Source: Fonticula alba ATCC 38817 (lineage: Eukaryota > Protista > Nucleariida). From it: 17,003 nt of DNA. The notes beneath the pieces were generated by a model that worked only from the letters and a program-made list of their open reading frames with translations, ran no database searches and was not told where the DNA came from. Both the position numbers and the translations under genes were made by a program. Positions 168 to 14,858 of this stretch are shown piece by piece (position 1 is the first letter of the stretch; each line of letters starts with the position of its first letter). The stretch lies in the NCBI GenBank assembly GCA_000388065.2, contig KB932205.1; one strand, given 5' to 3'.

Positions 168-2135
168 ATGACCCCCGACCCGCTGACGGACACGGGGGAT
201 CGGGGCATGACTCCGCCATCGGCCTTGCCCCCGCACTTTGCCTCGCTGGAGGCGGAAACCGCCGCCGGGACGGCCTCCCCCGCCGGACCGGCCGGGCCGA
301 AGGCCCCCCTCCCCACGGTGCTGACCACCGACCACCGGATCCCACCCATCCAGGTGGCCTACAGCGCGGCCAATGGGTCCCGGCCGTCGCGGCGCCACGG
401 CGGCCCGGCCGAGCGGCGCTCCCATCCCGAGCGCGTGTTCACCGCACTGCGCAATGCCCCAAGCGCCTTGCCGCCTGACGGCCCGGCGCCTCCCGCCGAA
501 AAGCAGCCCCCGGCCGGGCAGCCGGTCGACCCTCTGAAGCTGGACATAGCCCAAGTGAGGCAGAACCTCCTGCGTGGTTCGCTCCTGGGGTATGGCATCC
601 GCGCGCTGCCGGAGCTACTCGGCCTGCTGACTGCGCAGTTTGTGCGTGCCCCGCCCTTCACCGGCGCCATCCTCTCTTCCTCATCCTGCCCCTCTTCCCC
701 CTCCTCCTCCTCCGCCTCCTTGTCCTCCTCCTCTTTCCGCCCCCTGCTCGCCAGCCCACATGCGACTGCCTGGGCCACTCCGCCGGCCCCGCGCGGATGG
801 CCGATCCCCTCGCTGACATGCTCCGCGGGACCGTCGGGCAGAACCCCTCCCGGCGGCGAGCCCTCCTCCCCCTGATCCTGGAGGTCCTCAAGCGGACCTT
901 GGCCAATGGCGGCGCCATGGCGCAGGGGCTTTTCGTCGGGGCATGGGCCGCCGGAGTGCCCCTCCTGCGCCTCCTCATCAGCCATCTTCTCCTGTACTAT
1001 CGGATTCGCGTGCACCAGCGCCGGCGGCTGGCCCTAAGTTCGCTGGCCGCCGAGCCCAGTCACAAGCCCACTCCCATGGACCGGGATCTGGCCCGGGCGG
1101 ATGTGCGGCGCTGGGCGCCGGCCGTCAGCGCCGGGGCCGGGGCCCTGGCCGGCCTGACCCTGCTTCTGGACCAGTCCCAAGCGGGCCTCGAGCAGCGGTC
1201 CACACTGGCCCTGTATGCGGTGGTCCGCGCGCTGGATGCGCTGGCCCGGCTGTCAGTCCGCCGGGGCTGGATCCCGGAGGTGCCACACGCGGCGACGCTG
1301 CTTTTCCAGCTTGCCTGCACGGAGATCATGTTCGCGTGGTTTTACCACCCCCAGGCCCTGCCCCCGAGCTACGAACGGTGGATCTCCAAAATGGCCTACA
1401 TGGATGCGCGTCTGCTGTCGGTGATCCGCCTCCGGCGGCTGGGGTTCATTCAGTATGGCCTGGTGCATGATGCCTGCCTGGCGGAGTATTGCCGCGATCA
1501 TGGGCTGGATCCCCGCCGCGGGGATCCCTTCTACGGGCATCTGGACTGCGCCATCATCCACCCGCTGGATGGGCTGTCCTGCCGGGGCAATGCCTTCCGG
1601 CGATTCCGCAATGGCTTCCTCATGGCCCTGGGCATCTATGGCCCGGTTCATGCGCTTCCCCAGCTGTTTGCCTATATCCGGGGGAAGTCATCTGTGCGTG
1701 CTCGCGGCACGGGGCCTGGCGCCATCGAGCCCCGGTGCCCTTCCACGGTGAACCCCTCGCTTGCTTGCCTGCCTGCCTCCTGCCGTCACCCATTTTCCCT
1801 TCCGCCCCCCCCCCCCCCCCCCCCCCCCCCCCCGCGCTCCCCGCACCTCCTGCACTCGGGGCGGGCCTCGATGTACAGCGCTCGCTCCAGGNNNNNNNNN
1901 NNNNNNNNNNNNNNNNNNNNNNNNNNNNNNNNNNNNNNNNNNNNNNNNNNNNNNNNNNNNNNNNNNNNNNNNNNNNNNNNNNNNNNNNNNNNNNNNNNNN
2001 NNNNNNNNNNNNNNNNNNNNNNNNNNNNNNNNNNNNNNNNNNNNNNNNNNNNNNNNNNNNNNNNNNNNNNNNNNNNNNNNNNNNNNNNAGACACCCCCCT
2101 GTCGGCTCCTGCCCTGTCGCCATGGGCTTCCCTTC

Positions 2136-3637: not shown

Positions 3638-4087
3638 NNNNNNNNNNNNNNNNNNNNNNNNNNNNNNNNNNNNNNNNNNNNNNNNNNNNNNNNNNNNNNN
3701 NNNNNNNNNNNNNNNNNNNNNNNNNNNNNNNNNNNNNNNNNNNNNNNNNNNNNNNNNNNNNNNNNNNNNNNNNNNNNNNNNNNNNNNNNNNNNNNNNNNN
3801 NNNNNNNNNNNNNNNNNNNNNNNNNNNNNNNNNNNNNNNNNNNNNNNNNNNNNNNNNNNNNNNNNNNNNNNNNNNNNNNNNNNNNNNNNNNNNNNNNNNN
3901 NNNNNNNNNNNNNNNNNNNNNNNNNNNNNNNNNNNNNNNNNNNNNNNNNNNNNNNNNNNNNNNNNNNNNNNNNNNNNNNNNNNNNNNNNNNNNNNNNNNN
4001 NNNNNNNNNNNNNNNNNNNNNNNNNNNNNNNNNNNNNNNNNNNNNNNNNNNNNNNNNNNNNNNNNNNNNNNNNNNNNNNNNNNNNNN
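3638..4087. other. Assembly gap (450 N), flanked by poly-G on the left and poly-C on the right
   Basis: Run of N. Confidence 1.
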
Positions 4088-4561
4088 CCCCCCCCCCCCC
4101 CCAGCATGCGAGGGCGGCATATACACCACCCTCGCGTACCCCCCACCCCCACACACATACACGCCCCCCCGGTCCCCCGGCCGCCCAACAGCAGTGGGCA
4201 CACGCTCACACTGGGGACCGGGCCGCCGCCCGCGCCCCAAGGTCCGCACCCCATCTCGCCGCCGCCGCCGCCGCCGTCCAACAAGCCGCGACCTTCGCGG
4301 GGCCCGGGGCTCTCCGCGGGACATCCGCCTGGGGTCGCCTCTTCCCCTGGCCGACGGGGAGGGCTTTTCGGTTGGCGCCCGGCTCCAGCCCATGTACCCC
4401 ACCATGCCCCGCTCCTGCAACCCTCCCTCCCCCCCCCCTCCCCTCTTGCCTGCCACTGCCCGTGTGTGTCCCCCGCCCCCTTCGCCCCTCTCCTCCCCTC
4501 TCCTGCCCTCTCCTCTCGCCTGTCTCCCCTCCCCTCTCCTGCGCTGCTCTCTGGACAGAGG

Positions 4562-7500
4562 ATGTCCTTCTTCAGCGAGCTCTTCGGGCTCGGTGGCGGC
4601 GACGCCGCGGCCCCCGCCGCTGCCGCTTCGCCGGAGCCCCCCCGCGCGCGGGCCCCCAGCACCGGGGCCGGCGCCGGGGCCGGGATCGTGCACCCCTGCT
4701 CCCGGCACCCGGACCGCTTCAACCAGGGCTGGTGCCTGTGCTCCCTGCCGGAGGAGCTTTTCTCCCCGCGCCAGGACGGCCCCTCGTCCAAGACCACCGG
4801 CGCGGCCGGCCACCAGGATGACTCCCTGCCGCGGGGGCTCTTCAAGGCCAATGACCTGGGCCTGCCGGATGACCATGCGGAGCTGTCGCGCTGGTCGCTC
4901 CCCTACCAGCCGGACTTGATGCTGATCATGCAACAGCGCTCGGCGGCCCTGGCCCGGGCCCAGCAGGAGGATCCCAATGGCGATCTCCTGCAGCTGCTTG
5001 ACGACGCGGACTTCGACTCGGCCGCCGGGCCGGACATCTACCGCGTGTCCGAGGAGTCGGTCCGGGTGGAAACCTACCTCTCCATGCTGGAGGCCAATGA
5101 GCAGGGCGGGTCGCATGAGCTGCCGGCCGGCTCGGCAGCCGCCGACACTTCGCGCCTGGCCGCCGCCATTCAGACCAAGCGCCAGCAACGCCGCAAGGCC
5201 GCCCGCGACCAGGCCTTCGTCACGCGACTCGAGGAGAGCGCCCTCAGCCGCAGCACCATCCCCGGCAGTCCGACCGCCGGCTCGGCCGCGCCCGCCCCCG
5301 CCCCCGCGCCGCCGAAGATGATCATGGCCCCGGTCGACCGGAACCGCCTGGGCATGCCGCAGTTCCATGTGGACATCTTCCGCTCGGAGCTCATCTTCCC
5401 CGAGCTCCAGCGCAAGGGCGGCCTCTTCTCCACCGTCACCCCGGTCAGCGCCGAGCCCGCCCGGCCGTCTCTCTACGCCGACAACGCGCCCACCACCGTG
5501 CAGCTGATCATCCGGTCCTTCCACAATGACCATCTCCTCTTCGATGCCAGCCTCAATGAGGGGGACCCGGCGCTCGGTGCGGCCGGCGTGCGCGCATCCG
5601 CCGCCAGTGCTCCGGCTGCTGCCTCGGCCGGGGCTGCCGCCACGGCCGGGACCGCCCCGGGGGCCGCCGCTGCCAGCGCCTCCGCCGCCGCCGCCGCCCC
5701 CGCCCCCACCACCACCACCACCGCCGCCACGACCGATCCCGCTGCCCAGGTCGCCGACAAGCCTCTCCTCACGCGCCAGGTGAAGTATGTCCTGGACATC
5801 CCGGTGGTTGTTATCTCGGTGCGATGCTTGCTCTTTTGCCACATTCCCCCTCGGCTGCGGTGTGCAGCTTCTCTCGACTCACACCCCTTCCTGGGCATCT
5901 GCTCCGCCCTTTCCCCGTCCCCGTCCCCGCTCCCGCCCCCGCCCCCGCCCCCGCCCCTGATCCCATCTGCGCGACGTCCACCGCACAGCGCATTCCCGCC
6001 CTCAAGGCCCATCTGCTCCATGTGCCGGAGGGGGCCACCGAGGCGGTCCCCATCGCGCGGTCCTTCGTCCTGGAGGTCCCGCGTGCGTCCACCGCCGAGG
6101 CTCTGTCTCGCCTGCTGGACCTGGTGGCCTCGGTGCACTTCATTCTGGCTGGCTGGAAGTCCGGCAAGACGCCGGCCTCCTCGGCCGGTGACCCGGCCCC
6201 CGGGACGCGCCCCCGGTCGACCACCCTCTCCTCGGTGGCTTCGCCCGTCAACAGCCTCATGCTGACCGCCCTGCCGATCGAGCTGCTGCTGTCACACACG
6301 GCCGAGTCGCAGGCCTTCCTCAACCGGATTTGGTATAGCCAGAAGTTCGCGGCCACCCGGGCCGCCGCCGCTGCCGCTGCCACCGGGCAGAAGCCCCCGG
6401 CCGAGGGGGCTGCCATGGCCTCGCGGCCCCGGCCCACCCCCCGGGAGATCACCGACCTTTCGCTCCTGCTGCTGGCGCAGACGGCGCGCGACATGACCGC
6501 CCTGCTGTCGAGCGTGGCCCCGGCCCAGCTGCCGGCCCACATGGCCACCAACAGCGCGGCTGGCCCGGCCCCCCCGGCCTCCGGGTCGATATTCTCCTCG
6601 GAAGCCCGCGTCGGCCTGCTGAACACCGTGGCCGAGTGGCACCGCCAGCGGAACCTCCTGCTGGAGCTCTTTGCCCTGTGCCATCTGCTCGGCCTGGGCG
6701 GCTTCCTGCCGATCATCACCCGCACGATCAACGTCCTGATGCGCGACGATTCGGATCTCGGTGTGCCTGTTGCCTACCTGGCCGCGCGGTGCGTTCTCGG
6801 CCCTCTCCTTCCGCCCCTCTTCTTGTCTCCTGCCTCGCCTCGCCTCGCCTCGCCTCGCCTCCCGCAGCACCCTCACCCGGACAACCGTCACCCCTCCCTA
6901 CACACGCGCACACACACACACACACACACACTCTTCCCCATCACAGCCACAACGACGAGACTCTCCTGTCCATGGCCCATGGATGGGTTCTCCGGTCGCT
7001 CTTGGACCCCGGCCGCCTGCAGAGCGCCCTCAATGTCCTGCACAATGAGTCCTTCAACCCCAACCCCAACACCAACCTCTCGGTGGATCTCTTTAAGCCG
7101 GCCGGCTCTGAGTCGGCCGTGCGCCTGATCGATTCCGGCTCCCGGCTGTCCTATCGGCGCTTCGTCATCCCGCTCTACGTCTTCCAGGGGCTGCTCCCCC
7201 GCCGGGCCTGGTACAACCTCACCCGCATGCCGCCATCTGACCGGACGGTCTGCCGGCTGGTGCGCGACCTCCGGCCCATCACCACCGGGGCCATCCCCGG
7301 GTCCGTGGGCCTCGCCTCGGCCGACTCCCAGGACTCCATCACCTCCGGTGCCATTGTCGCCACGTACACCCTCTATGAGATGCCCTCGCATCGGGCCCTG
7401 CTGTCAGCTCGCTTCGATCCCAACACCAGCGAGTATGTCATTTGCGCCGGGCGCGAGGTCATTCGCCATGGTCCCTCCTACGTCGGTGGTCTACGGTGCG

Positions 7501-8606
7501 CCTCCCTTGGCCGTCCCCCTTTCATAGACACCCCCCTGTCGGCTCCTGCCCTGTCGCCACGGGCTTCCCCTCTCCCCCCCTCCCGCCCCCCACCACAACG
7601 CGTAACTGACTCCCGACCACGGGGCATCGCTGTTGTTGCCCTCCCCCACCCCACTTGCCCGCTGTGCCAACGCAGGTACAACCTTGCTGGCACCGTCTTC
7701 ACGGTATTCAACCACGGTACGGCCACCTGCCTGACCATGCCGGCCGTGGTGGAAAACATTAGTCCCCCACGCAGCGAGCAGGCCATCATCACGTACGACC
7801 TGAACTTCTGGGGCCTTGAGCCGCGCTCCTTCCATGTGGCCCTGCCGAAGCAGGTCCGCGACCTGTCCTCGGCCCCGCCGCTTGAGGAGCAGATCGCCCA
7901 CCAGGAGGCCGCCAGTGATTTCTACCAGATCCAGAACAAGTCGCCAAAGTGGAACGAAGGTGCGTGCACTGTGCTTCCTCCTCACCCGCGGCCGCCTCCC
8001 TTCGGGGGCTCCCGCTGGCGTACATCATCAAAGGACGCCTGTCCATTGCCTGGGGGCCGTGTTGTTTTGCTTTTCCCGGGAGCAGGGCGCGGGGAGGGCC
8101 CATTGCCCGCCCTTCCTCAGGCTCTAACCTCCTTCTTTTTCCTGCCCCCCTTTGGCCGACCTCCCATGTACACACACACACGCACACACACAGAGCGTGC
8201 CACTTTCACCCTGGACTTCCGTGGCAACGTCCGCTGTGCCAGCAAGAAGAACTTCATTCTTGAGCTGCCCGCGGCCGATGCCGATTCTCGTGCGTGTGAT
8301 ATCTCCCCCTGCCGTGGGAACCTTGTTTGCATTCGCTTTTCTCCTTCATTTTGTGCATCCGCCACTGCGCTCCTCGAACCCCATCCCTCGTTCTCTCTCT
8401 CTCTCTCTCTCTCCCTCTCTCCCTCTGCTTCCCCCACCCCTCTAACATGACGACTTCCCGGCATGCAACCAGAACCCACCGAGGTGATGATGATGGGCAA
8501 GCTCGAGCGTAACCACTTCTACGTGCACTTCAATGCTCCGCTCACTCCGCTGGCGACGTTCGGCATCATCCTCAGTAGCTTCCACCGCAAGCTCATGGTC
8601 AAGTAG
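4562..8606 (+). CDS. Tubby-domain protein with N-terminal degenerate BTB/BACK-like region, spliced, ~1039 aa
   Basis: Inferred exons 4562-5818, 5989-6788, 6947-7495, 7676-7959, 8194-8289, 8473-8606 (3120 nt = 1040 codons, ends TAG). The spliced C-terminus matches Tubby motifs: VCRLVRD, SYVGGLR|YNLAGTVFTVFNHG, EQAIITYDLNFWGLEPRSFHVALP, IQNKSPKWNE|ERATFTLDFRGNVRCASKKNFIL, MMMGKLERNHFYVHFNAPLTPLATFGIILSSFHRKL. The Tubby call is strong, the BTB call moderate; extra 5' exons are possible. Confidence 0.85.
6832..6861 (+). repeat. (GCCTC)6 microsatellite in Tubby gene intron 2
   Basis: Direct reading. Confidence 0.9.
6900..6930 (+). repeat. (CA)n microsatellite near the 3' end of Tubby gene intron 2
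   Basis: acacacgcgcacacacacacacacacacaca; a similar tract at 8170-8193 ends in the acceptor AG. Confidence 0.9.
8392..8426 (+). repeat. (CT)n microsatellite in Tubby gene intron 5
   Basis: Direct reading. Confidence 0.9.
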
Positions 8607-9064
8607 ACGCCCCTCATCCTCCACCCCCCGTGTCCACCTCCTTTCCCTGGCCCCACATGCGCCGCCAGCACCACGCCACCCGCACCATCCTCCACTCCAT
8701 ATGAACATCCAAATGGCCACTTTCCCCCTCATGTCTGTCCTTGTCAACACCGCCGATGAAATATATACAAATGCATACAAACCCACATACATCTTGAAAC
8801 ATGGCCAAGAGCACCCCGAGAATGAGGGGACGGGGGGGAAGAAGGGCGAGCTGGGCAAGAAGCATGCCCCCCGGTACGTGCATGCTAAATGTGTGTGTGT
8901 ACACATAGGCGCGGATGCTGGGGGGAGGGCGGGGGGGGGAGGGAGGGGGAGGGGGAACAAGAGCTGCGCACCGGGCTCCGATGCACAACCAAGCGAGCGG
9001 GGTGCGGAGGAGAGGCGCAGGCAAGGCCCGGCAGAATATATGAAAAGAGAGGGGCTGTTTCCCT

Positions 9065-10589
9065 TTAGGTGGACTTCTCGATCGCATCCTTGATCGCCTT
9101 GGCGAGGCCGGTGGCATCCTTGTCGTTGAGGGTGCGCAGCAGGTAGCGAATGGGGGCCGGCTTGCCGTCGTCACCGACCTTGAAGGTGACAAAGTCCACC
9201 GACTTGCCCGAAAGGGTGGCCGAGGACTCCTTGAGAACGGCAGCATTCAGCAGCAGCTTGCCAGAGCCCTCCATTCGGGCGACCAGGCGGTACTTGCCAT
9301 TGGCGCGGTGCTTGTTCAGCTTCAGGAAGCCGATGCCCTGATCGACCCAGGCCTTGTTGGCCAGCTCGAGCAGCTTGAAGCGCTCGACCTCGAAGACGGC
9401 ATCCTCGTCCTCCTCGCCGGCGCCGGTCTTGATGAGCTCCTCATTGGTGCGCGTGCACTCGGGCAGCGGGGCATCGTCATCCTCCTCGTCCTGGGCAGCA
9501 GCAGCGGCAGCGCCGGTGGCACCGGCCGCGCCGAAGGTCGGCGGAGTGAAGGTGAAGGCCGAGCTACCACCAGCACCGAAGGAACCGCCCGCGCCGCCTG
9601 AGAGGGGGGTGAAGTTGAAGCCACTGGCCGAGCCACCGGCCGGGGCGGGCGGGCTGAAGGTGAAGGTGCTGGACGAGAGGGACGGCTGCTTGGCGTCACC
9701 ACCGGCCGGGGCCGGGGGGTTGAAGGTGAAGGCACTGCTGGCCCCGGAGCCGAAGGCCGGCGCGGCACCCTTGGCCCCGGGGGCGCTGCTGGTGGCGGTG
9801 CTCAGCGCGCCGAAGGTGGTGGCGCCAGAACCAAACTGGAAGCCACCGCTGTGCGGCGCATCACCGGACGCCTTGAACACGAACTTCGAGTCCTTCGGGG
9901 CCGGCCCGTCATCCTCATCCTCATCGGCATCCTCATCATTGGACCCGGACCCGGACCCGGACTCGGACCCGGACTCGGACTCGGAACCCGAGCCATCATC
10001 ACCCTCCTCGGCCTCGTCAATGTAATCGGCATCCTCCTCGTCGTCGTCGTCGTCGTCATCGTCGTGACCACCATCGCTGCTGTCCTGCATCTTGGAAGAG
10101 GGGGCCCCCGCACCAAAGCCGAAGCCACCGGCAGTCGACTTGGTGGCAGTGAAGCTGAAGCCGCCCGACAGCGGCTTGGTGGCATCAAGGCTGGACCCAC
10201 CGGAGACGGGCTTGGTCATGCCAAACCCGAGGCCCTCGGAGGCCGGCTTGGCCGCGCCGAAGCTGAAACCGCTCGAGGTGGGCTTGGAAGCGGCGCCGGC
10301 ATCGCCGGCGGCCGAGGAGGCGGACCCGGACCCGGACCCGGACCCGGAGGGCATACGAGCAAGCATTTCCCGACGGTAGGTGCTATACCGATCGGCGAAG
10401 AAGGTCAGATCGACAAAGGGATCATTGCTGATGGCCTTATTAAGGGTGGCCATGGCGCTCTTGTTGAGGGCGCTCAGCTCAGAGAGGATGCTCTCGACAG
10501 ACGTGCTGGAAGTGGACCCGGCAGCGGGGCTGGCCATGGTGGACGGAGTGGCCAACCCGAAAGAGAGGCCGGTAGCGGTAGAGCCAAAA

Positions 10590-10621
<32 letters not shown>

Positions 10622-11267
10622 AGTAGCAGAGGCAGCCGCAGGGCCACCAGTGCTGGGCTTGCTGAAGGAGAAGCCGCCGCCGAAGCCAGCCGCTGGGGAA
10701 GGGGCGCTGCGCTTGGAGGGCGGCGGTGCGGTGCTCAGAGACGACTGCGAGCCGAAGCTGGACCCGCCAGCCGGAGCCGGCGTCGGGGTTGACAGATTCT
10801 TAAAAGGGTTGTTCTTCTGGATGCGCTCCTGGACGAGGCAACGGGCATGGCAATTAGCGAGGGAGGCAGGGAGACCGAGGGGAATGCCCCATGAAGGGGC
10901 ATCATGGAAGGGGCGACAATGAGCGAGATGAGGAGGAAGGCGCATGGATGGATGTGTGCGTGTGTGCGTATGTGCGTGTGTGCTGTCTGTGGACAGGGCG
11001 GCCGTACCCCAAAATCGGACTCCTTCACCCGGCGGGCGGCCTTGAGGATTACGCGGCTGGCGCCGGTGTTCTGTGGCAGGCAATATGACATCGGAAGAAG
11101 AGGGAGGAAAAGGAGTGAGTGGTTGCCGTGGGGAGAGACCGGGGGAAAAGGCGGAGATAGCGGAAAACCGGACGCACACCACGGGGGGCGGTGCTTGAGG
11201 GGACATCGACCGAGTCATCGTCGGCCGAGTACGGGTTGAGCTGGCTGCCAGCCTGACGCTTGGACAT
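9065..11267 (-). CDS. NUP50: Nup50/Nup2-like nucleoporin (importin-alpha-binding N-terminus, FG/FxF repeats, C-terminal RanBP1-type Ran-binding domain), ~638 aa
   Basis: Inferred exons 11267-11178, 11070-11008, 10828-9065 (phase 0, GT-AG, GCTAAT branch point in intron 2). The N-terminus MSKRQAGSQLNPYSADDD...RVILKAARRVK resembles Nup50 MAKR..../R.IKKAKRR. The central LSALNKSAMATLNKAISNDPFVDLTFFADRYSTY matches the Nup50 'L.ALN...NP..DLT' helix. Many GFSFG/FTF repeats; RanBD GEEDEDAVFEVERFKLLELANKAWVDQGIGFLKLNK...YRLVARMEGSGKLLLNA. Confidence 0.88.
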
Positions 11268-12223
11268 TGCTGCAGCGGGTGCGGTGGGGGAGAGAGAGGG
11301 GGAGAGAGAGAGGGAGGGAGGGAGAAAGGAAGGGAGAGGTTTAAAGGTGCAAGGGGCAGTAGATGCGGTGTGCCCATCCCCGGGGGCGGCTGGACTCCAC
11401 GCCTGACTGTCTTTTAGACACCCCTCAGGTGTCGGCGGCCCCGCACGGTGCAGAGGGGCATGTGTGCTGGCGCGCGTGCGCGTGTGAGCGGGCAAGGGCC
11501 CAGGGGAGCAAGGGTGTATGTGCCCACGCCGCGGTGCGCGTGCACCTCCGGCCGAGACCCTCGGACAGGGGCGCAGGAACCTCGGGACGGAGACCGCCTC
11601 GTCAGGGAAAACAGCGCGCAGGGACCAGCCAGGGAGCCGGACCGACCAGGGCAGAGTAGAACCGACCAAATGAAGGGGACAGAACGAGGGAGGGGGGGGG
11701 GGGCACTCAACAGCCATCTAACCGCAACCAACGTGGCGGGCGCGCGGGAAGCTGAAACGGACGCTGACCAATCCCCAAGTGCCAACGCAATGGAGAATGT
11801 TATTCGCGACTCTCGGCGGGAGCGGCCGCCGCGGGAGGCAGGAGGGGAGGGGGGCATGCGTGACGGATTTGGGTGTATTGCTCAAAAGATTGTGGGGACG
11901 GCAAGGCCGATTGAAAAAGAGGGCACACAAAAGGCACGGGGCCTTGGGCAGAGAGAGAGAGAGAGGGAGGGAGAGAGAAAGAGAGAGAGGGAGAGAGCGG
12001 GAGGGAGAGGGGGAGGAAAAAAAAGGGCCCCGCCTCAGGTCCTGAATTGCCTTTCCTTCGCGCAGGCTGGCATCTCCAGGCTTGTCTAGATGAGGGTGGG
12101 CCGGGGAGCTGACCCATGGATGGGAGAAGAACCACAGGGCAAACCTGGCGGAGGAGCGGGCCACAGGAGGATGCATTCACAACAATCGGGACCTGCCCTC
12201 GATGCACCGCCGATCGGGGCCTG

Positions 12224-14858
12224 CTACTGCTGGTCTTTGTTGAACCTCTTGTCATTGCGCTTGGACCGGTCATCCTCCTGGTGGTTCGACTGGCGCTCGG
12301 GAGATTGGGACGAGTGGTAGCGGCGCGGGCCATGATGCCTGCGCTGCTGCGAGTCATGTCGCTGGCCCTTATGGTCGACCCATTTCTCGTTGGAGTTCGA
12401 GCGGTGGCGCTGTTGCTGGTCGCGCTCCTCCCGGTGCCGCTGGATCCGCTCAACGCGCTTCTGATGCCGATACTGGGACACCGACATGCCGGAGTCCACG
12501 CCAAAGAAGGTGCCATCCACATCCGGCGCATGGGTAGGATGCACCACACGTGTGCTCTTCCGATCTGAGTCATGTCGCTGGCCCTTATGGTCGACCCATT
12601 TCTCGTTGGAGTTCGAGCGGTGGCGCTGTTGCTGGTCGCGCTCCTCCCGGTGCCGCTGGATCCGCTCAACGCGCTTCTGATGCCGATACTGGGACACCGA
12701 CATGCCGGAGTCCACGCCAAAGAAGGTGCCATCCACATCCGGCGCATGGGTAGGATGCACCACCGGGGCCGGGGCCGTGTCGCCGGACGAGGCGGATTTG
12801 GCGGCCGCCGCCGCCGCCGCTGCCGCCGCATTCGCATCCGCATGCGCCTGTAGACGATCACCCAGGGCCTTCAGCACCGGCCGATTGGACTCATCAGCCA
12901 CCAGCTTCATGATTGCCCGGTTGCGATCCATGCGCTTGTAGAAGACCGTCACCGGGGTGCCAGGGGCCAGGGCATTTAGCAGGGAAATCTTGATTGGGGA
13001 CATCTCGGACGCCTGATCAATGATACCGTCATTGGTCAGGGCATGGGTCAAACTATCGCCCTCGGGAACCAGGAAGTCACCAGAGTGCACAAAGCCACTG
13101 GTGGAGAAGGGCGGAAGCAGCTCGATCATGATGCCAAAGTCCAACGACTGGATCACCTTGGCCGGGTATGGCTGGTTCTCCACCAGTCGACCCATCTTTT
13201 CAAGGAGAACGGTGGTGGCAGCCTGTCTCGGGAACCAGGAAGTCACCAGAGTGCACAAAGCCACTGGTGGAGAAGGGCGGAAGCAGCTCGATCATGATGC
13301 CAAAGTCCAACGACTGGATCACCTTGGCCGGGTATGGCTGGTTCTCCACCAGTCGACCCATCTTTTCAAGGAGNNNNNNNNNNNNNNNNNNNNNNNNNNN
13401 NNNNNNNNNNNNNNNNNNNNNNNNNNNNNNNNNNNNNNNNNNNNNNNNNNNNNNNNNNNNNNNNNNNNNNNNNNNNNNNNNNNNNNNNNNNNNNNNNNNN
13501 NNNNNNNNNNNNNNNNNNNNNNNNNNNNNNNNNNNNNNNNNNNNNNNNNNNNNNNNNNNNNNNNNNNNNNNNNNNNNNNNNNNNNNNNNNNNNGCGGGAT
13601 CATCAAAGCACACGGGCGGACCTTGATGGAGTCATGGTTGGCACCGGAGATATGGATGACGGCTTCTCCAGAACTGTCGGACGAAATGCTGACCGAGACA
13701 ACTGCCGGTGTGTCGGGTGGTCGAGTTAGGAGGGCGCAGAGGATCAGGGGGCCAAAGGGCAGCAATGCATGTGTGCACGTACGGTATTCCTCCTCAAAGG
13801 CGCGAATCGGGTAGGAGAACCCGAAGAGCGAAGAGATGAGCTCATTGTGGACAGGGACCACCTCTGCAGAGATGGACACGCGGGAGGCGTGGACGTTAGT
13901 CGAGGATCGATGAGCAGGGCAAAGCCCGGAGCCGGGGAGGGGGGGGGGGGGCGACGACGGGGGAATAGGGCGGGAGCAGCGCACCAACAAGCGGAATGAA
14001 CGGGTTCGGCTCGCACGGCCCCAGGGACTGCACAATCGACAGCATATCATTGTAACGCGTGGCGGAAGCCGCCTCGCAGGCAGTCAGCACTGAAGCAGGA
14101 GCAGGACGGAAGCAAAGGGATGGGAAGGTGGGGAGATGGGGAGACAGGGAGAGAAAGCGAGAGGGAGAGAAAGCGAGAAAGTGAAAGGGAGAGAAGGAGA
14201 GAAGGAGAGAAGGAGAGAAGGAGAGAAGGAGAGGGCGAGAGTGAAGATGGGGAAGTAGAAAATGGCAGGCGAGTAGGCGGGACGCAAGTGGTCAATAAGA
14301 AGGTATGGCCAAAAGGAGGGGGGGGGGATGTTGAGAAGGAAACACAATGCAAGGAGAAAGAGAGGAAGGCAGATCACGCACGAGACTCAACTTGAGGCCA
14401 GGAAAGCCCGACATTGGAGGTGGACTCCACTCGGGCACACACCAGCTCATTGTTGAAGGTGATCATGCTCGCCCGGGCATCGGCACACATTTCCTCCGGC
14501 AGGTCCGGGTCCATGACAACCAGAGGCTCATCGGGGGTCTGGCCGTCCGGGCCCTGGACCGTTGGCAAAAATAGGACACCGTCGACGGCCGACGTGATAC
14601 CGCTGAGGGGGATCCCGGTGCTGTAGAGGGACATCTGCAATGCCAGGGCATTGGCCGAAACGGAGGACCCGTTACAGAGCGTCGGGTCAATGCGATTGCT
14701 GACGGTGTAGAGGGACTCTTCCGGCGGCGGGAGCAGGCGCTGCTGGAGCCGGCAGAGGAGGTCATCTGTGTAGGAGACGGTCCCACGGGGGTGGGACGGG
14801 AGTGCAGAGGGGGAGAGCGGAAGAGTCAGCCAAAGGAGAAGACTTAGGGCGGGGGGGG

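What the first reader, a model, noticed from the sequence alone, without database searches (positions are those of the whole stretch)
5470..8606. Apparent BTB(-BACK)-Tubby fusion: a possible CUL3-coupled Tubby protein
Seen upstream of a clear Tubby domain, in the correct order, are segments resembling each BTB element, separated by Ala/Pro-rich insertions: TTVQLIIRS (beta1); VKYVLDIPVVVIS|RIPALKAHL (cf. F.AHK.VLAARSPYF.A.F); SFVLEVPRASTAEALSRLLDLV (cf. IEL.DVSPEAF..LL.F.Y); NLLLELFALCHLLGLGGFLPIITRTI (cf. NV.ELL.LA..L.I..L...C..FL); then LGVPVAYLAAR|HNDETLLSMAHGWVLRSL (cf. BACK start C....LA..YN...L...A..YI..NF). Known: plant Tubby-like proteins carry an F-box (SCF/CUL1) and animal TULP4 a SOCS box (CUL5-type); BTB-BACK recruits CUL3. 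Inference: a third, convergent way of coupling a phosphoinositide-binding Tubby domain to a cullin E3 ligase. I do not recall this architecture being described, but could not search.
Basis: partly seen in the sequence, partly recalled or inferred. Interest (0 to 1): 0.8.

Follow-up and report, generated by a model that had tools for sequence, protein, structure and literature searches.

The report
Tubby protein with a BTB-like module
A transcribed Fonticula alba gene joins a clear Tubby domain to a very divergent helical module that looks like the back half of a BTB domain plus its cullin-3 "3-box"; this hints at, but does not prove, a third way of wiring Tubby proteins to cullin ubiquitin ligases.

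Summary
The gene is real. Six GT..AG exons (4562-8606, +) encode a 1039-aa protein identical to Fonticula alba H696_03324, and all five splices lie on one RNA contig. The Tubby domain is solid (Pfam Tub, E 8e-34).

The BTB claim is only partly supported. No sequence method finds BTB or BACK in this protein (Pfam, PDB sequences, an exhaustive HMMER run). The only relative found is a 726-aa protein from an uncultured eukaryote.

Low-confidence AlphaFold models were made separately for each orthologue. In unbiased structure searches both bring BTB/3-box proteins to the top (SPOP, KLHL3, KBTBD4, NPR1, KEAP1). Protein-language-model neighbours are about 80-90% BTB families. A poxvirus BTB profile matches the orthologue's A4-A5 hairpin in register (0 of 2000 shuffles).

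No BTB beta-sheet is predicted. CUL3 binding is untested. The Tubby phosphoinositide pair K-x-R reads G-x-R in both orthologues.

My estimates: about 0.6 that a BTB-derived module is present, and about 0.3 that the protein is a working CUL3 adaptor. I class it as a new variant of a known kind. The scan has not noted this elsewhere.

The parts
4562..5818 (+). Exon 1 (aa 1-419).
   Evidence: ATG at 4562 and GT donor at 5819. RNA contigs cover 4552-5665 and 5737-5817. No Pfam family at E<=10.
5989..6788 (+). Exon 2 (aa 420-686, last codon split).
   Evidence: Joint 5817/5988 in RNA contigs. The spliced product is identical to P0001.
5492..6126 (+). Present, but not verified as BTB.
   Evidence: Coordinates. 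No significant similarity to the orthologue, to a BTB HMM or to Pfam. pLDDT is below 50. Language-model neighbours of aa 400-540 are mostly BTB/POZ families, but at a score of only 0.71.
6157..6591 (+). Poorly conserved Ala/Pro-rich stretch with a few helices (aa 476-620). It has no clear counterpart in the 726-aa orthologue.
   Evidence: Alignments; composition.
6652..6729 (+). BTB A4-A5-like helical hairpin (aa 641-666, NLLLELFALCHLLGLGGFLPIITRTI).
   Evidence: Conserved with P0002 NVYELLALSHFLGISELQRLCAKRI. The P0002 copy matches a poxvirus BTB HMM in register at 11.6 bits, reached by 0 of 2000 shuffles. Both models superpose on SPOP, KLHL3 and KBTBD4 A4-A5.
6754..7004 (+). 3-box / BACK-start-like helix pair (aa 675-705, DLGVPVAYLAAR|HNDETLLSMAHGWVLRSLL). 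It spans intron 2 (6789-6946).
   Evidence: Conserved with P0002 aa 374-406, including an invariant Trp. It aligns with SPOP 298-329, KLHL3 to residue 194 and BTBD9 to residue 168. GMCL1 BACK start in PDB phmmer.
6947..7495 (+). Exon 3 (aa 686-869): end of the helical module, a linker, and the first strands of the Tubby domain.
7353..8585 (+). Tubby C-terminal domain (aa 822-1033 by Pfam; the barrel probably starts near aa 775). Interrupted by introns 3-5.
   Evidence: Pfam PF01167, E 8.1e-34, profile positions 24-255 of 256. Exon pieces also hit Tub. Alignment with canonical Tubby proteins.
7488..7490 (+). Codon for Gly867, at the position of the PI(4,5)P2-binding Lys (mouse Tubby K330). The partner Arg869 is kept (split codon 7494-7495 + 7676).
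   Evidence: Alignment A7: canonical GKLRS against GGLRY (Fonticula) and GGIRC (P0002). The role of K330/R332 is taken from PMC10445746 and PMC6366083.
7676..7959 (+). Exon 4 (aa 869-964).
   Evidence: Joint 7494/7675 in RNA contigs; Pfam Tub.
8194..8289 (+). Exon 5 (aa 964-996).
   Evidence: One RNA contig runs from 7675-7959 straight into 8201-8289. The spliced product equals P0001.
8473..8606 (+). Exon 6 (aa 996-1039 plus the TAG stop).
   Evidence: Joint 8289/8473 in RNA contigs; Pfam Tub C-terminus.

Best explanation
H696_03324 is a transcribed Tubby-family protein. Directly upstream of its Tubby barrel lies a strongly diverged, BTB-derived helical module. The module comprises at least the A3/A4-A5 helices and the two '3-box'/BACK-start helices that BTB adaptors use, together with the BTB core, to dock on cullin-3.

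Shown: the architecture, its transcription, its conservation in a second eukaryote, and the BTB-like shape of aa ~640-705.

Inferred: the module works like the BTB/3-box of SPOP- or KLHL-type proteins. That would mean self-association and possibly docking on CUL3. The Tubby barrel would then be the target-recognition or membrane-recognition end, or the fate of the barrel itself would be controlled. My sub-estimates are: BTB-derived module present ~0.6; complete BTB fold including the beta-sheet ~0.35; functional CUL3 adaptor ~0.3.
For: - Gene model and transcript. Tubby domain.
- Orthologue P0002 (726 aa, uncultured eukaryote, full ORF on a 2.3-kb intronless contig) aligns from aa 643 to 1039 (E 1e-46). 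The helical part alone scores 45 against a null of 26 +/- 4, reached by 3 of 500 shuffles.
- Language-model neighbours were asked three times. About 82 of 100, 89 of 100 and about 89 of 100 nearest clusters are BTB/POZ/BACK families, for P0001:290-720, P0001:400-540 and P0002:180-470.
- The sole PDB sequence hit of P0002:270-470 is the BTB-BACK protein GMCL1. It aligns in register from B3 to the BACK start (E 0.93; E 0.08 with a profile).
- A poxvirus BTB-BACK HMM gives P0002 340-420 a score of 11.6 bits, reached by 0 of 2000 shuffles, aligned on A4-A5. hhalign picks the same segment.
- Structure search without Foldseek, over 48,161 PDB representatives. The P0002 model gives SPOP BTB/3-box at Z 10.2, 9.8 and 9.5 as the top three, with KBTBD4, NPR1, KLHL3 and KLHL22 in the top 12. 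The independently built Fonticula model gives SPOP at 8.7 and 8.5, KLHL3 at 7.9 and NPR1 at 7.9 and 7.7 as the top five, aligned on aa 639-720.
- In AFDB Swiss-Prot, 27 of the top 30 hits are BTB proteins, with rmsd about 1.1 A over about 60 residues. AFDB clusters give BACK/BTB proteins.
- Context: mammalian TULP3 associates in trans with CUL3 and KBTBD6/7 (PMC7948452).
Against: - Pfam finds no BTB, BACK or Skp1_POZ in either orthologue on any slice.
- An exhaustive HMMER run on aa 1-720 found nothing.
- PDB phmmer on the Fonticula slices gives no BTB chain. The narrower two-sequence profile A4 loses GMCL1.
- hhalign of the orthologue pair against the poxvirus BTB profile gives probability 0.03.
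- Fonticula aa 636-720 alone is not significant against the poxvirus HMM (217 of 2000 shuffles reach its score).
- Both AlphaFold models are poor (mean pLDDT 46 and 48; the best stretch is 55-74). They predict only helices and no B1-B3 sheet.
- All Foldseek E-values exceed 0.08. Z values of 8-10 fall in the range the tool calls 'middling' for helical models.
- Language-model scores (0.71-0.82) are below the tool's 0.9 threshold for more than a lead.
- AlphaFold and the language model may both be reading the same short A4-A5 motif, so these lines of evidence are not fully independent.
- No conserved phi-x-E CUL3 contact motif is evident.
Confidence: 0.55

Rival explanations
1. Degenerate BTB remnant. 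The module descends from a BTB-3-box domain but has lost the beta-sheet half and the CUL3 contact. It now serves only as a dimerisation or scaffolding helix bundle next to the Tubby barrel.
For: Only the C-terminal helices are conserved between the two orthologues. The region upstream of aa 643 is Ala/Pro-rich and could not be aligned. No beta-strands are predicted. The N-terminal halves give no BTB HMM signal.
Against: P0002 aa 283-345 is compact, free of low-complexity sequence, and by eye collinear with B1/A1-B3-A3. The trimmed VIA alignments extend to SPOP residue 211 and KEAP1 residue 79, which is into the N-terminal half. Language-model neighbours of Fonticula aa 400-540 alone are still BTB/POZ families.
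Confidence: 0.25
2. The module is not BTB-related. It would be a lineage-specific helical extension of the Tubby domain, built of generic helical hairpins whose likeness to BTB/3-box is convergent or an artefact of poor models.
For: No significant profile hit. Low pLDDT. Helical hairpins match many folds at Z 6-8 (notes).
Against: BTB families dominate every ranked list from two separately modelled orthologues, across four structure libraries, and in the language-model search. BTB chains are, from my own knowledge, a very small fraction of these libraries. The shuffle test of the A4-A5 motif gave 0 of 2000. The structural register agrees with the sequence-motif register.
Confidence: 0.15
3. 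Divergent F-box-Tubby. The conserved helices around the invariant Trp (MAHGW / CYQW) would form an F-box, as in plant Tubby-like proteins, coupling the protein to Skp1-CUL1.
For: F-box-Tubby is the common architecture outside animals (PMC8335595 and PMC6366083). From memory, the 3-box is structurally analogous to the F-box, and the spacing of Leu residues and the Trp loosely recalls '...VCKxW'.
Against: No Pfam F-box or F-box-like hit at E<=10. No F-box protein appears among the top structural hits, whereas BTB proteins fill them. The conserved block starts with an A4-A5-type hairpin, which an F-box lacks. About 70 residues separate it from the barrel, whereas I recall the F-box lying close to the barrel in plant TLPs.
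Confidence: 0.05

Closest known systems
SPOP / KLHL / KBTBD-type BTB-3-box(-BACK) substrate adaptors of cullin-3 ligases
   Same: Helices aa ~640-705 (P0002 345-405) superpose on A4-A5 plus the 3-box: SPOP 254-331 at rmsd 1.3-1.6 A over 65-67 residues, and KLHL3 116-194. The order is the same, with an N-terminal adaptor module and a C-terminal recognition domain.
   Different: No Pfam BTB or BACK match. The B1-B3 sheet and A1-A2 are unverified. Large low-complexity insertions are present in Fonticula. The recognition domain is a Tubby barrel rather than MATH or Kelch. CUL3 binding is untested.
Plant-type Tubby-like proteins (F-box + Tubby; SCF/CUL1)
   Same: A small helical cullin-adaptor-type module lies N-terminal to a Tubby barrel in one polypeptide.
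   Different: No F-box is detectable here, and the module resembles BTB/3-box. The linker to the barrel is longer. The Lys of the PIP2 pair is missing.
Animal TULP4
   Same: A Tubby barrel is combined with a cullin-box-type element.
   Different: No WD40 or SOCS box (Pfam). The order and size differ.
Mammalian TULP3 with CUL3-KBTBD6/7 (PMC7948452)
   Same: It links a Tubby protein with CUL3 and BTB adaptors.
   Different: There the BTB adaptor is a separate protein and TULP3 appears to be the substrate. Here the BTB-like module is in cis.
GMCL1 (germ cell-less-like 1; BTB-BACK protein, PDB 9ijj)
   Same: It is the only PDB chain that phmmer finds with P0002:270-470, aligned in register from B3 to the BACK start.
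   Different: E is 0.93 (0.08 with a profile), which is not significant. Fonticula slices do not find it, and neither does the narrower profile.

Membership tests
Tubby (Pfam PF01167) | Significant match to the Tub profile over the whole barrel | tested here: met
   E 8.1e-34, 117.9 bits (cut-off 27), profile positions 24-255 of 256, aa 822-1033. P0002: E 2.3e-35.
Tubby (Pfam PF01167) | Canonical PI(4,5)P2 pocket pair K-x-R (mouse K330/R332) | tested here: not met
   GKLRS in canonical Tubby proteins against GGLRY (Fonticula) and GGIRC (P0002): the Lys is replaced by Gly and the Arg is kept. Residue roles from PMC10445746 and PMC6366083. Placing K330/R332 on the GKLRS motif rests on my own knowledge.
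BTB/POZ (Pfam PF00651, clan POZ) | Match to a BTB/POZ profile HMM | tested here: not met
   No BTB, BTB_2, Skp1_POZ or BACK hit at E<=10 on the whole proteins or on 20 slices. The filters drop hits above about 0.1, so weak matches are not excluded.
BTB/POZ (Pfam PF00651, clan POZ) | Core fold: three-stranded sheet B1-B3 packed against helices A1-A5 | tested here: inconclusive
   AlphaFold2 with 1 or 4 sequences gives mean pLDDT 46 and 48. A3-A5 are recovered at pLDDT 55-74. The candidate B1-B3 region is below 50 and drawn as helix.
BTB/POZ (Pfam PF00651, clan POZ) | A4-A5 hairpin with the N-x-x-x-L-L-x-x-A...L...C...F/I-L pattern in register | tested here: met
   P0002 340-420 against the poxvirus BTB HMM: 11.6 bits, 0 of 2000 shuffles. 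hhalign picks the same segment. Structural superposition on many BTB proteins. For Fonticula this is met only through homology to P0002 and its own model; its own HMM score is not significant.
BTB-3-box/BACK CUL3 adaptors | Helix pair (3-box) directly after A5, continuing into BACK helices | tested here: inconclusive
   The structural alignments run through SPOP 298-331, KLHL3 to 194 and BTBD9 to 168. They rest on low-confidence models and Z values of 8-10. There is no Pfam BACK hit. Only about 90 residues separate A5 from the barrel, shorter than the roughly 100-130 residues I recall for a full BACK domain.
BTB-3-box/BACK CUL3 adaptors | Binding to the CUL3 N-terminal domain (phi-x-E motif plus 3-box contacts) | not testable with these tools
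   No multimer prediction is available and the Fonticula CUL3 sequence was not fetched. No phi-x-E conserved between the two orthologues was seen by eye.
F-box-Tubby (plant TLP type) | F-box profile match N-terminal to the barrel | tested here: not met
   No F-box or F-box-like family at E<=10.

The most novel reading that the evidence does not exclude
The Fonticula lineage and at least one other uncultured eukaryote carry a single-chain BTB-3-box-Tubby protein that docks on cullin-3. The Tubby barrel would then have been coupled independently to all three major cullin adaptor systems: F-box/CUL1 in plants, the SOCS box of animal TULP4, and BTB/CUL3 here. With the Lys of the canonical PIP2 pair lost, the barrel may serve as a protein- or altered-lipid-recognition module of a CRL3 ligase. 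It would be a cis version of the TULP3-CUL3-KBTBD6/7 relation seen in mammals.
Probability: 0.3. Interest if true: 0.7.

Novelty: new variant of a known kind. Interest (0 to 1): 0.5.

Why it matters
Tubby proteins are phosphoinositide-regulated adaptors. Their link to ubiquitin ligases is known only through F-box fusions (plants and protists) and the SOCS box of TULP4. In mammals TULP3 stability depends on CUL3 in trans.

A cis BTB/3-box-Tubby protein would be a third, convergent coupling. It would suggest that putting a Tubby barrel on a cullin is a recurrent and selectable solution. It would also offer a simple two-domain system in a culturable holomycote for asking what a Tubby barrel recognises when it sits on an E3.

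It is also an example of a domain invisible to profile HMMs that language-model and structure-based searches recover consistently.

If the BTB reading fails, the finding reduces to an ordinary divergent Tubby protein with a lineage-specific helical extension.

Tried and rejected
1. Pfam on six exon pieces, on the whole proteins and on 20 slices of both orthologues gave only Tub, plus chance hits at E>0.08 (Fervidolysin prodomain, Cullin_Nedd8).
2. Exhaustive HMMER of aa 1-720 against 1.84 billion representatives gave 0 hits, not even the query's own protein. I cannot explain this, so I do not read it as proof of absence.
3. Word-indexed searches: aa 400-540 gave nothing at E<=10. The Tubby region gave only the protein itself and P0002.
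4. A metagenome scan with the orthologue alignment returned eight ordinary Tubby proteins and no further subfamily member.
5. PDB sequence searches with Fonticula slices gave only chance hits: Cgi121, designed repeats, procarboxypeptidase prodomain, UBR4. The profile A4 hit a designed repeat protein through summed repeats.
6. I built a BTB-BACK profile from poxvirus BTB-Kelch genes fetched with a degenerate AHKxVLAAxSxYF pattern. It is narrow (about 5 distinct sequences). hhalign against the orthologue pair gave probability 0.03.
7. I considered an alternative A4-A5 for Fonticula at aa 506-532 (NSLMLTALPIELLLSHTAESQAFLNRI), which would imply a compact BTB at 404-535. Neither the HMM nor the orthologue supports it.
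8. Three mutually exclusive alignments of the N-terminal halves came from MAFFT or by eye. None is significant.
9. The N-termini (aa 1-300 against P0002 1-80) show no significant similarity.
10. One shuffle script with hhalign timed out. Three hmmsearch scripts failed on an incompatible pair of options before the version that ran.


Full report
WHAT IS THERE. The window is GC-rich eukaryotic DNA. Reading 4300-8800 gives six exons with GT..AG introns of 158-234 nt: 4562-5818, 5989-6788, 6947-7495, 7676-7959, 8194-8289 and 8473-8606. The spliced product has 1039 residues. It is letter-for-letter the database protein P0001, 'hypothetical protein H696_03324 [Fonticula alba]' / 'Tubby C-terminal domain-containing protein'. 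Public RNA-derived contigs of the same organism carry all five joints on one 2155-nt contig (5737-5817 | 5988-6788 | 6949-7494 | 7675-7959 | 8201-8289 | 8473-8775), and another contig covers exon 1. The BTB-like region and the Tubby domain sit on one mRNA.

TUBBY DOMAIN. Pfam gives Tub at aa 822-1033 (E 8.1e-34, profile 24-255 of 256) and nothing else on the whole protein. When the barrel is aligned with canonical Tubby proteins fetched from metatranscriptomes, the motif GKLRS reads GGLRY in Fonticula and GGIRC in its orthologue. From my own knowledge, that motif carries the PI(4,5)P2-coordinating pair K330/R332 of mouse Tubby; the role of the pair is documented in PMC10445746 and PMC6366083. 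The Lys is lost in both orthologues and the Arg is kept. 'Phosphoinositide-binding' should therefore not be taken for granted.

SEQUENCE TESTS OF THE BTB CLAIM. All direct tests are negative.
- Pfam finds no BTB, BACK or Skp1_POZ at E<=10 on exon pieces, the whole protein, or many slices.
- phmmer against all PDB sequences gives only chance hits.
- An exhaustive HMMER search of aa 1-720 against 1.84 billion representatives returned nothing. It did not return the query's own protein either, so I treat this result with caution.

THE ONE RELATIVE. A search with the Tubby region among proteins of similar length found one relative, P0002. It has 726 aa and comes from a JGI environmental sample. It is a complete ORF with UTRs on a 2.3-kb intronless contig of 40% GC, and four near-identical sequences exist on other contigs.

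BLASTP aligns Fonticula aa 643-1039 with P0002 346-726 (29% identity, E 1e-46). Without the barrel, the helical part still scores 45 against a shuffle null of 26 +/- 4, reached by 3 of 500 shuffles.

Upstream of aa 643 the two proteins are not demonstrably alike (best local score 31, null 28 +/- 4). MAFFT placed the upstream parts in three incompatible ways. P0002 also has no Pfam BTB.

EVIDENCE THAT THE CONSERVED HELICES ARE BTB-LIKE.
1. Language-model neighbours. For Fonticula aa 290-720, Fonticula aa 400-540 and P0002 aa 180-470, about 82, 89 and 89 of the 100 nearest Atlas clusters carry BTB/POZ/BACK families. The scores are 0.79, 0.71 and 0.82, which the tool itself rates as leads only.
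2. PDB sequence hit. The only PDB hit of P0002:270-470 is the BTB-BACK protein GMCL1, aligned in register from B3 to the first BACK helices (E 0.93; E 0.08 with a three-sequence profile). A narrower profile loses it.
3. BTB profile. I built a BTB-BACK profile from poxvirus BTB-Kelch genes. P0002 340-420 scores 11.6 bits on its C-terminal half, aligned on A4-A5, and 0 of 2000 shuffles reach that score. The whole candidate BTB (283-373) scores 7.8 bits (2 of 2000), again through A4-A5 only. The candidate N-terminal halves of both proteins, and Fonticula 636-720 alone, are not above shuffles. hhalign picks the same A4-A5 segment (P 0.04). It gives no significant profile-profile match.
4. Structure. 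AlphaFold2 without a real alignment is poor. Fonticula 400-720 has mean pLDDT 46. P0002 275-480 with four sequences has mean pLDDT 48 and pTM 0.48, all helices, with pLDDT 55-74 only over residues ~50-130.

Even so, the search that aligns all 48,161 PDB representatives without Foldseek puts BTB proteins at the top for both models.
- For the P0002 model, SPOP BTB/3-box takes ranks 1-3 (Z 10.2, 9.8, 9.5), and KBTBD4, NPR1, KLHL3 and KLHL22 are within the top 12.
- For the separately built Fonticula model, SPOP (8.7, 8.5), KLHL3-Cul3 (7.9) and NPR1 (7.9, 7.7) take ranks 1-5. The aligned part is model residues 240-321, which is aa 639-720.
- The second look at Foldseek's list gives 16 BTB rows before the first unrelated one, among them SPOP 254-331 at rmsd 1.3-1.6 A over 65-67 residues and the KEAP1 BTB.
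- In AFDB Swiss-Prot, 27 of the top 30 hits are BTB proteins, such as BTBD9 108-168 at rmsd 1.1 A. AFDB clusters give BACK/BTB proteins.

The offset of the SPOP alignment (P0002 residue minus 76) places NVYELLALSHFLGISELQRLCAKRI on SPOP A4-A5 and VVLAGHLG...YQWICSNL on the SPOP 3-box. This is the register the motif comparison suggests. The SPOP sequence is recalled from memory and was not fetched.

WEIGHING. Every individual number is weak: Foldseek E values above 0.08, Z values of 8-10 that the tool calls middling for helical models, and language-model scores below 0.9. AlphaFold and the language model may both be responding to one short motif. What carries weight is consistency. Two orthologues with about 20-25% identity in this region were modelled separately. 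Four structure libraries, a language-model search, a shuffle-controlled HMM test and the single PDB sequence hit all name the same family. From my own knowledge, that family makes up a very small fraction of each library. It is also the family proposed beforehand.

I therefore accept, at about 0.6, that aa ~620-705 descend from or closely mimic the helical half of a BTB domain plus its 3-box. I do not accept as shown that a complete BTB fold exists. In the simplest collinear alignment with P0002 they are not even the counterparts of P0002's candidate B1-A3 (aa 283-335). Those counterparts would instead be Fonticula aa 573-640, where the B3 position is a Pro/Ala-rich loop. A full BACK domain is not shown either; only about 90 residues lie between A5 and the barrel.

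MECHANISM. Shown: the architecture, its transcription, its conservation, and its BTB/3-box-like shape. Inferred from what BTB-3-box modules do in SPOP- and KLHL-type proteins: self-association, and docking on the CUL3 N-terminal domain, with the C-terminal domain (here the Tubby barrel) selecting the target or the membrane. I put CUL3 docking at about 0.3, because the half of the BTB that carries the phi-x-E contact is unverified and no such motif is conserved between the orthologues. A remnant used only for dimerisation (0.25), an unrelated helical extension (0.15) and a cryptic F-box (0.05) remain open.

NOVELTY. The protein is annotated with Tub only. The searchable literature has no paper holding both 'tubby domain' and 'BTB domain'. 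Papers holding both BTB and tubby do not describe a fusion. The nearest is TULP3 as a partner of CUL3 and KBTBD6/7 in trans (PMC7948452). I could not query InterPro architectures. I class the finding as a new variant of a known kind (a Tubby barrel joined to a cullin-adaptor-type module), with moderate interest (0.5). The scan's earlier notes hold nothing on this elsewhere.

Noticed in passing
window 7496-7675, 7960-8193 and 8290-8472: Frame 0 runs without a stop from 6636 to 8450, so introns 3 and 4 (180 and 234 nt) and nearly all of intron 5 (183 nt) are stop-free in the exon frame. A purely ORF-based reading would run straight through introns 3 and 4. RNA contigs show all three introns are spliced out.
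   Followed up: yes
window 6909-6930, 8171-8192, 8393-8412: (CA)n and (CT)n microsatellites sit just upstream of the acceptor sites of introns 2, 4 and 5.
   Followed up: no
window 1892-2088, 3638-4087, 13374-13593: Three assembly gaps (runs of N). The second lies about 475 nt upstream of the start codon, so the promoter and 5' region of this gene are incomplete.
   Followed up: partly
window 9065-11377 (-): The convergent neighbour is a 770-aa Ser/Gly/Ala-rich protein with FG-type repeats, an acidic stretch and a C-terminal RanBP1 domain (Pfam PF00638, E 5e-13). It looks like a Nup50/Nup2- or RanBP3-like nuclear transport factor.
   Followed up: partly
P0002 (JGI sample 3300050370, contig Ga0506604_010556; locus L009 52-2232): The only orthologue comes from an unidentified eukaryote with 40% GC. 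It has long Glu/Lys-rich low-complexity runs where Fonticula has Ala/Pro-rich ones. Both insertion-prone sites appear to lie before the conserved helices. The organism was not identified.
   Followed up: partly
search of P0001:1-720: The exhaustive HMMER search returned zero hits at E<=0.001, not even the query's own full-length protein, which is in the word-indexed collection. This is unexplained; its cluster representative may be another protein, or the protein may be left out.
   Followed up: no
ORFs there gave no Pfam family at E<=0.001 in my one scan. I did not examine it further.
   Followed up: no
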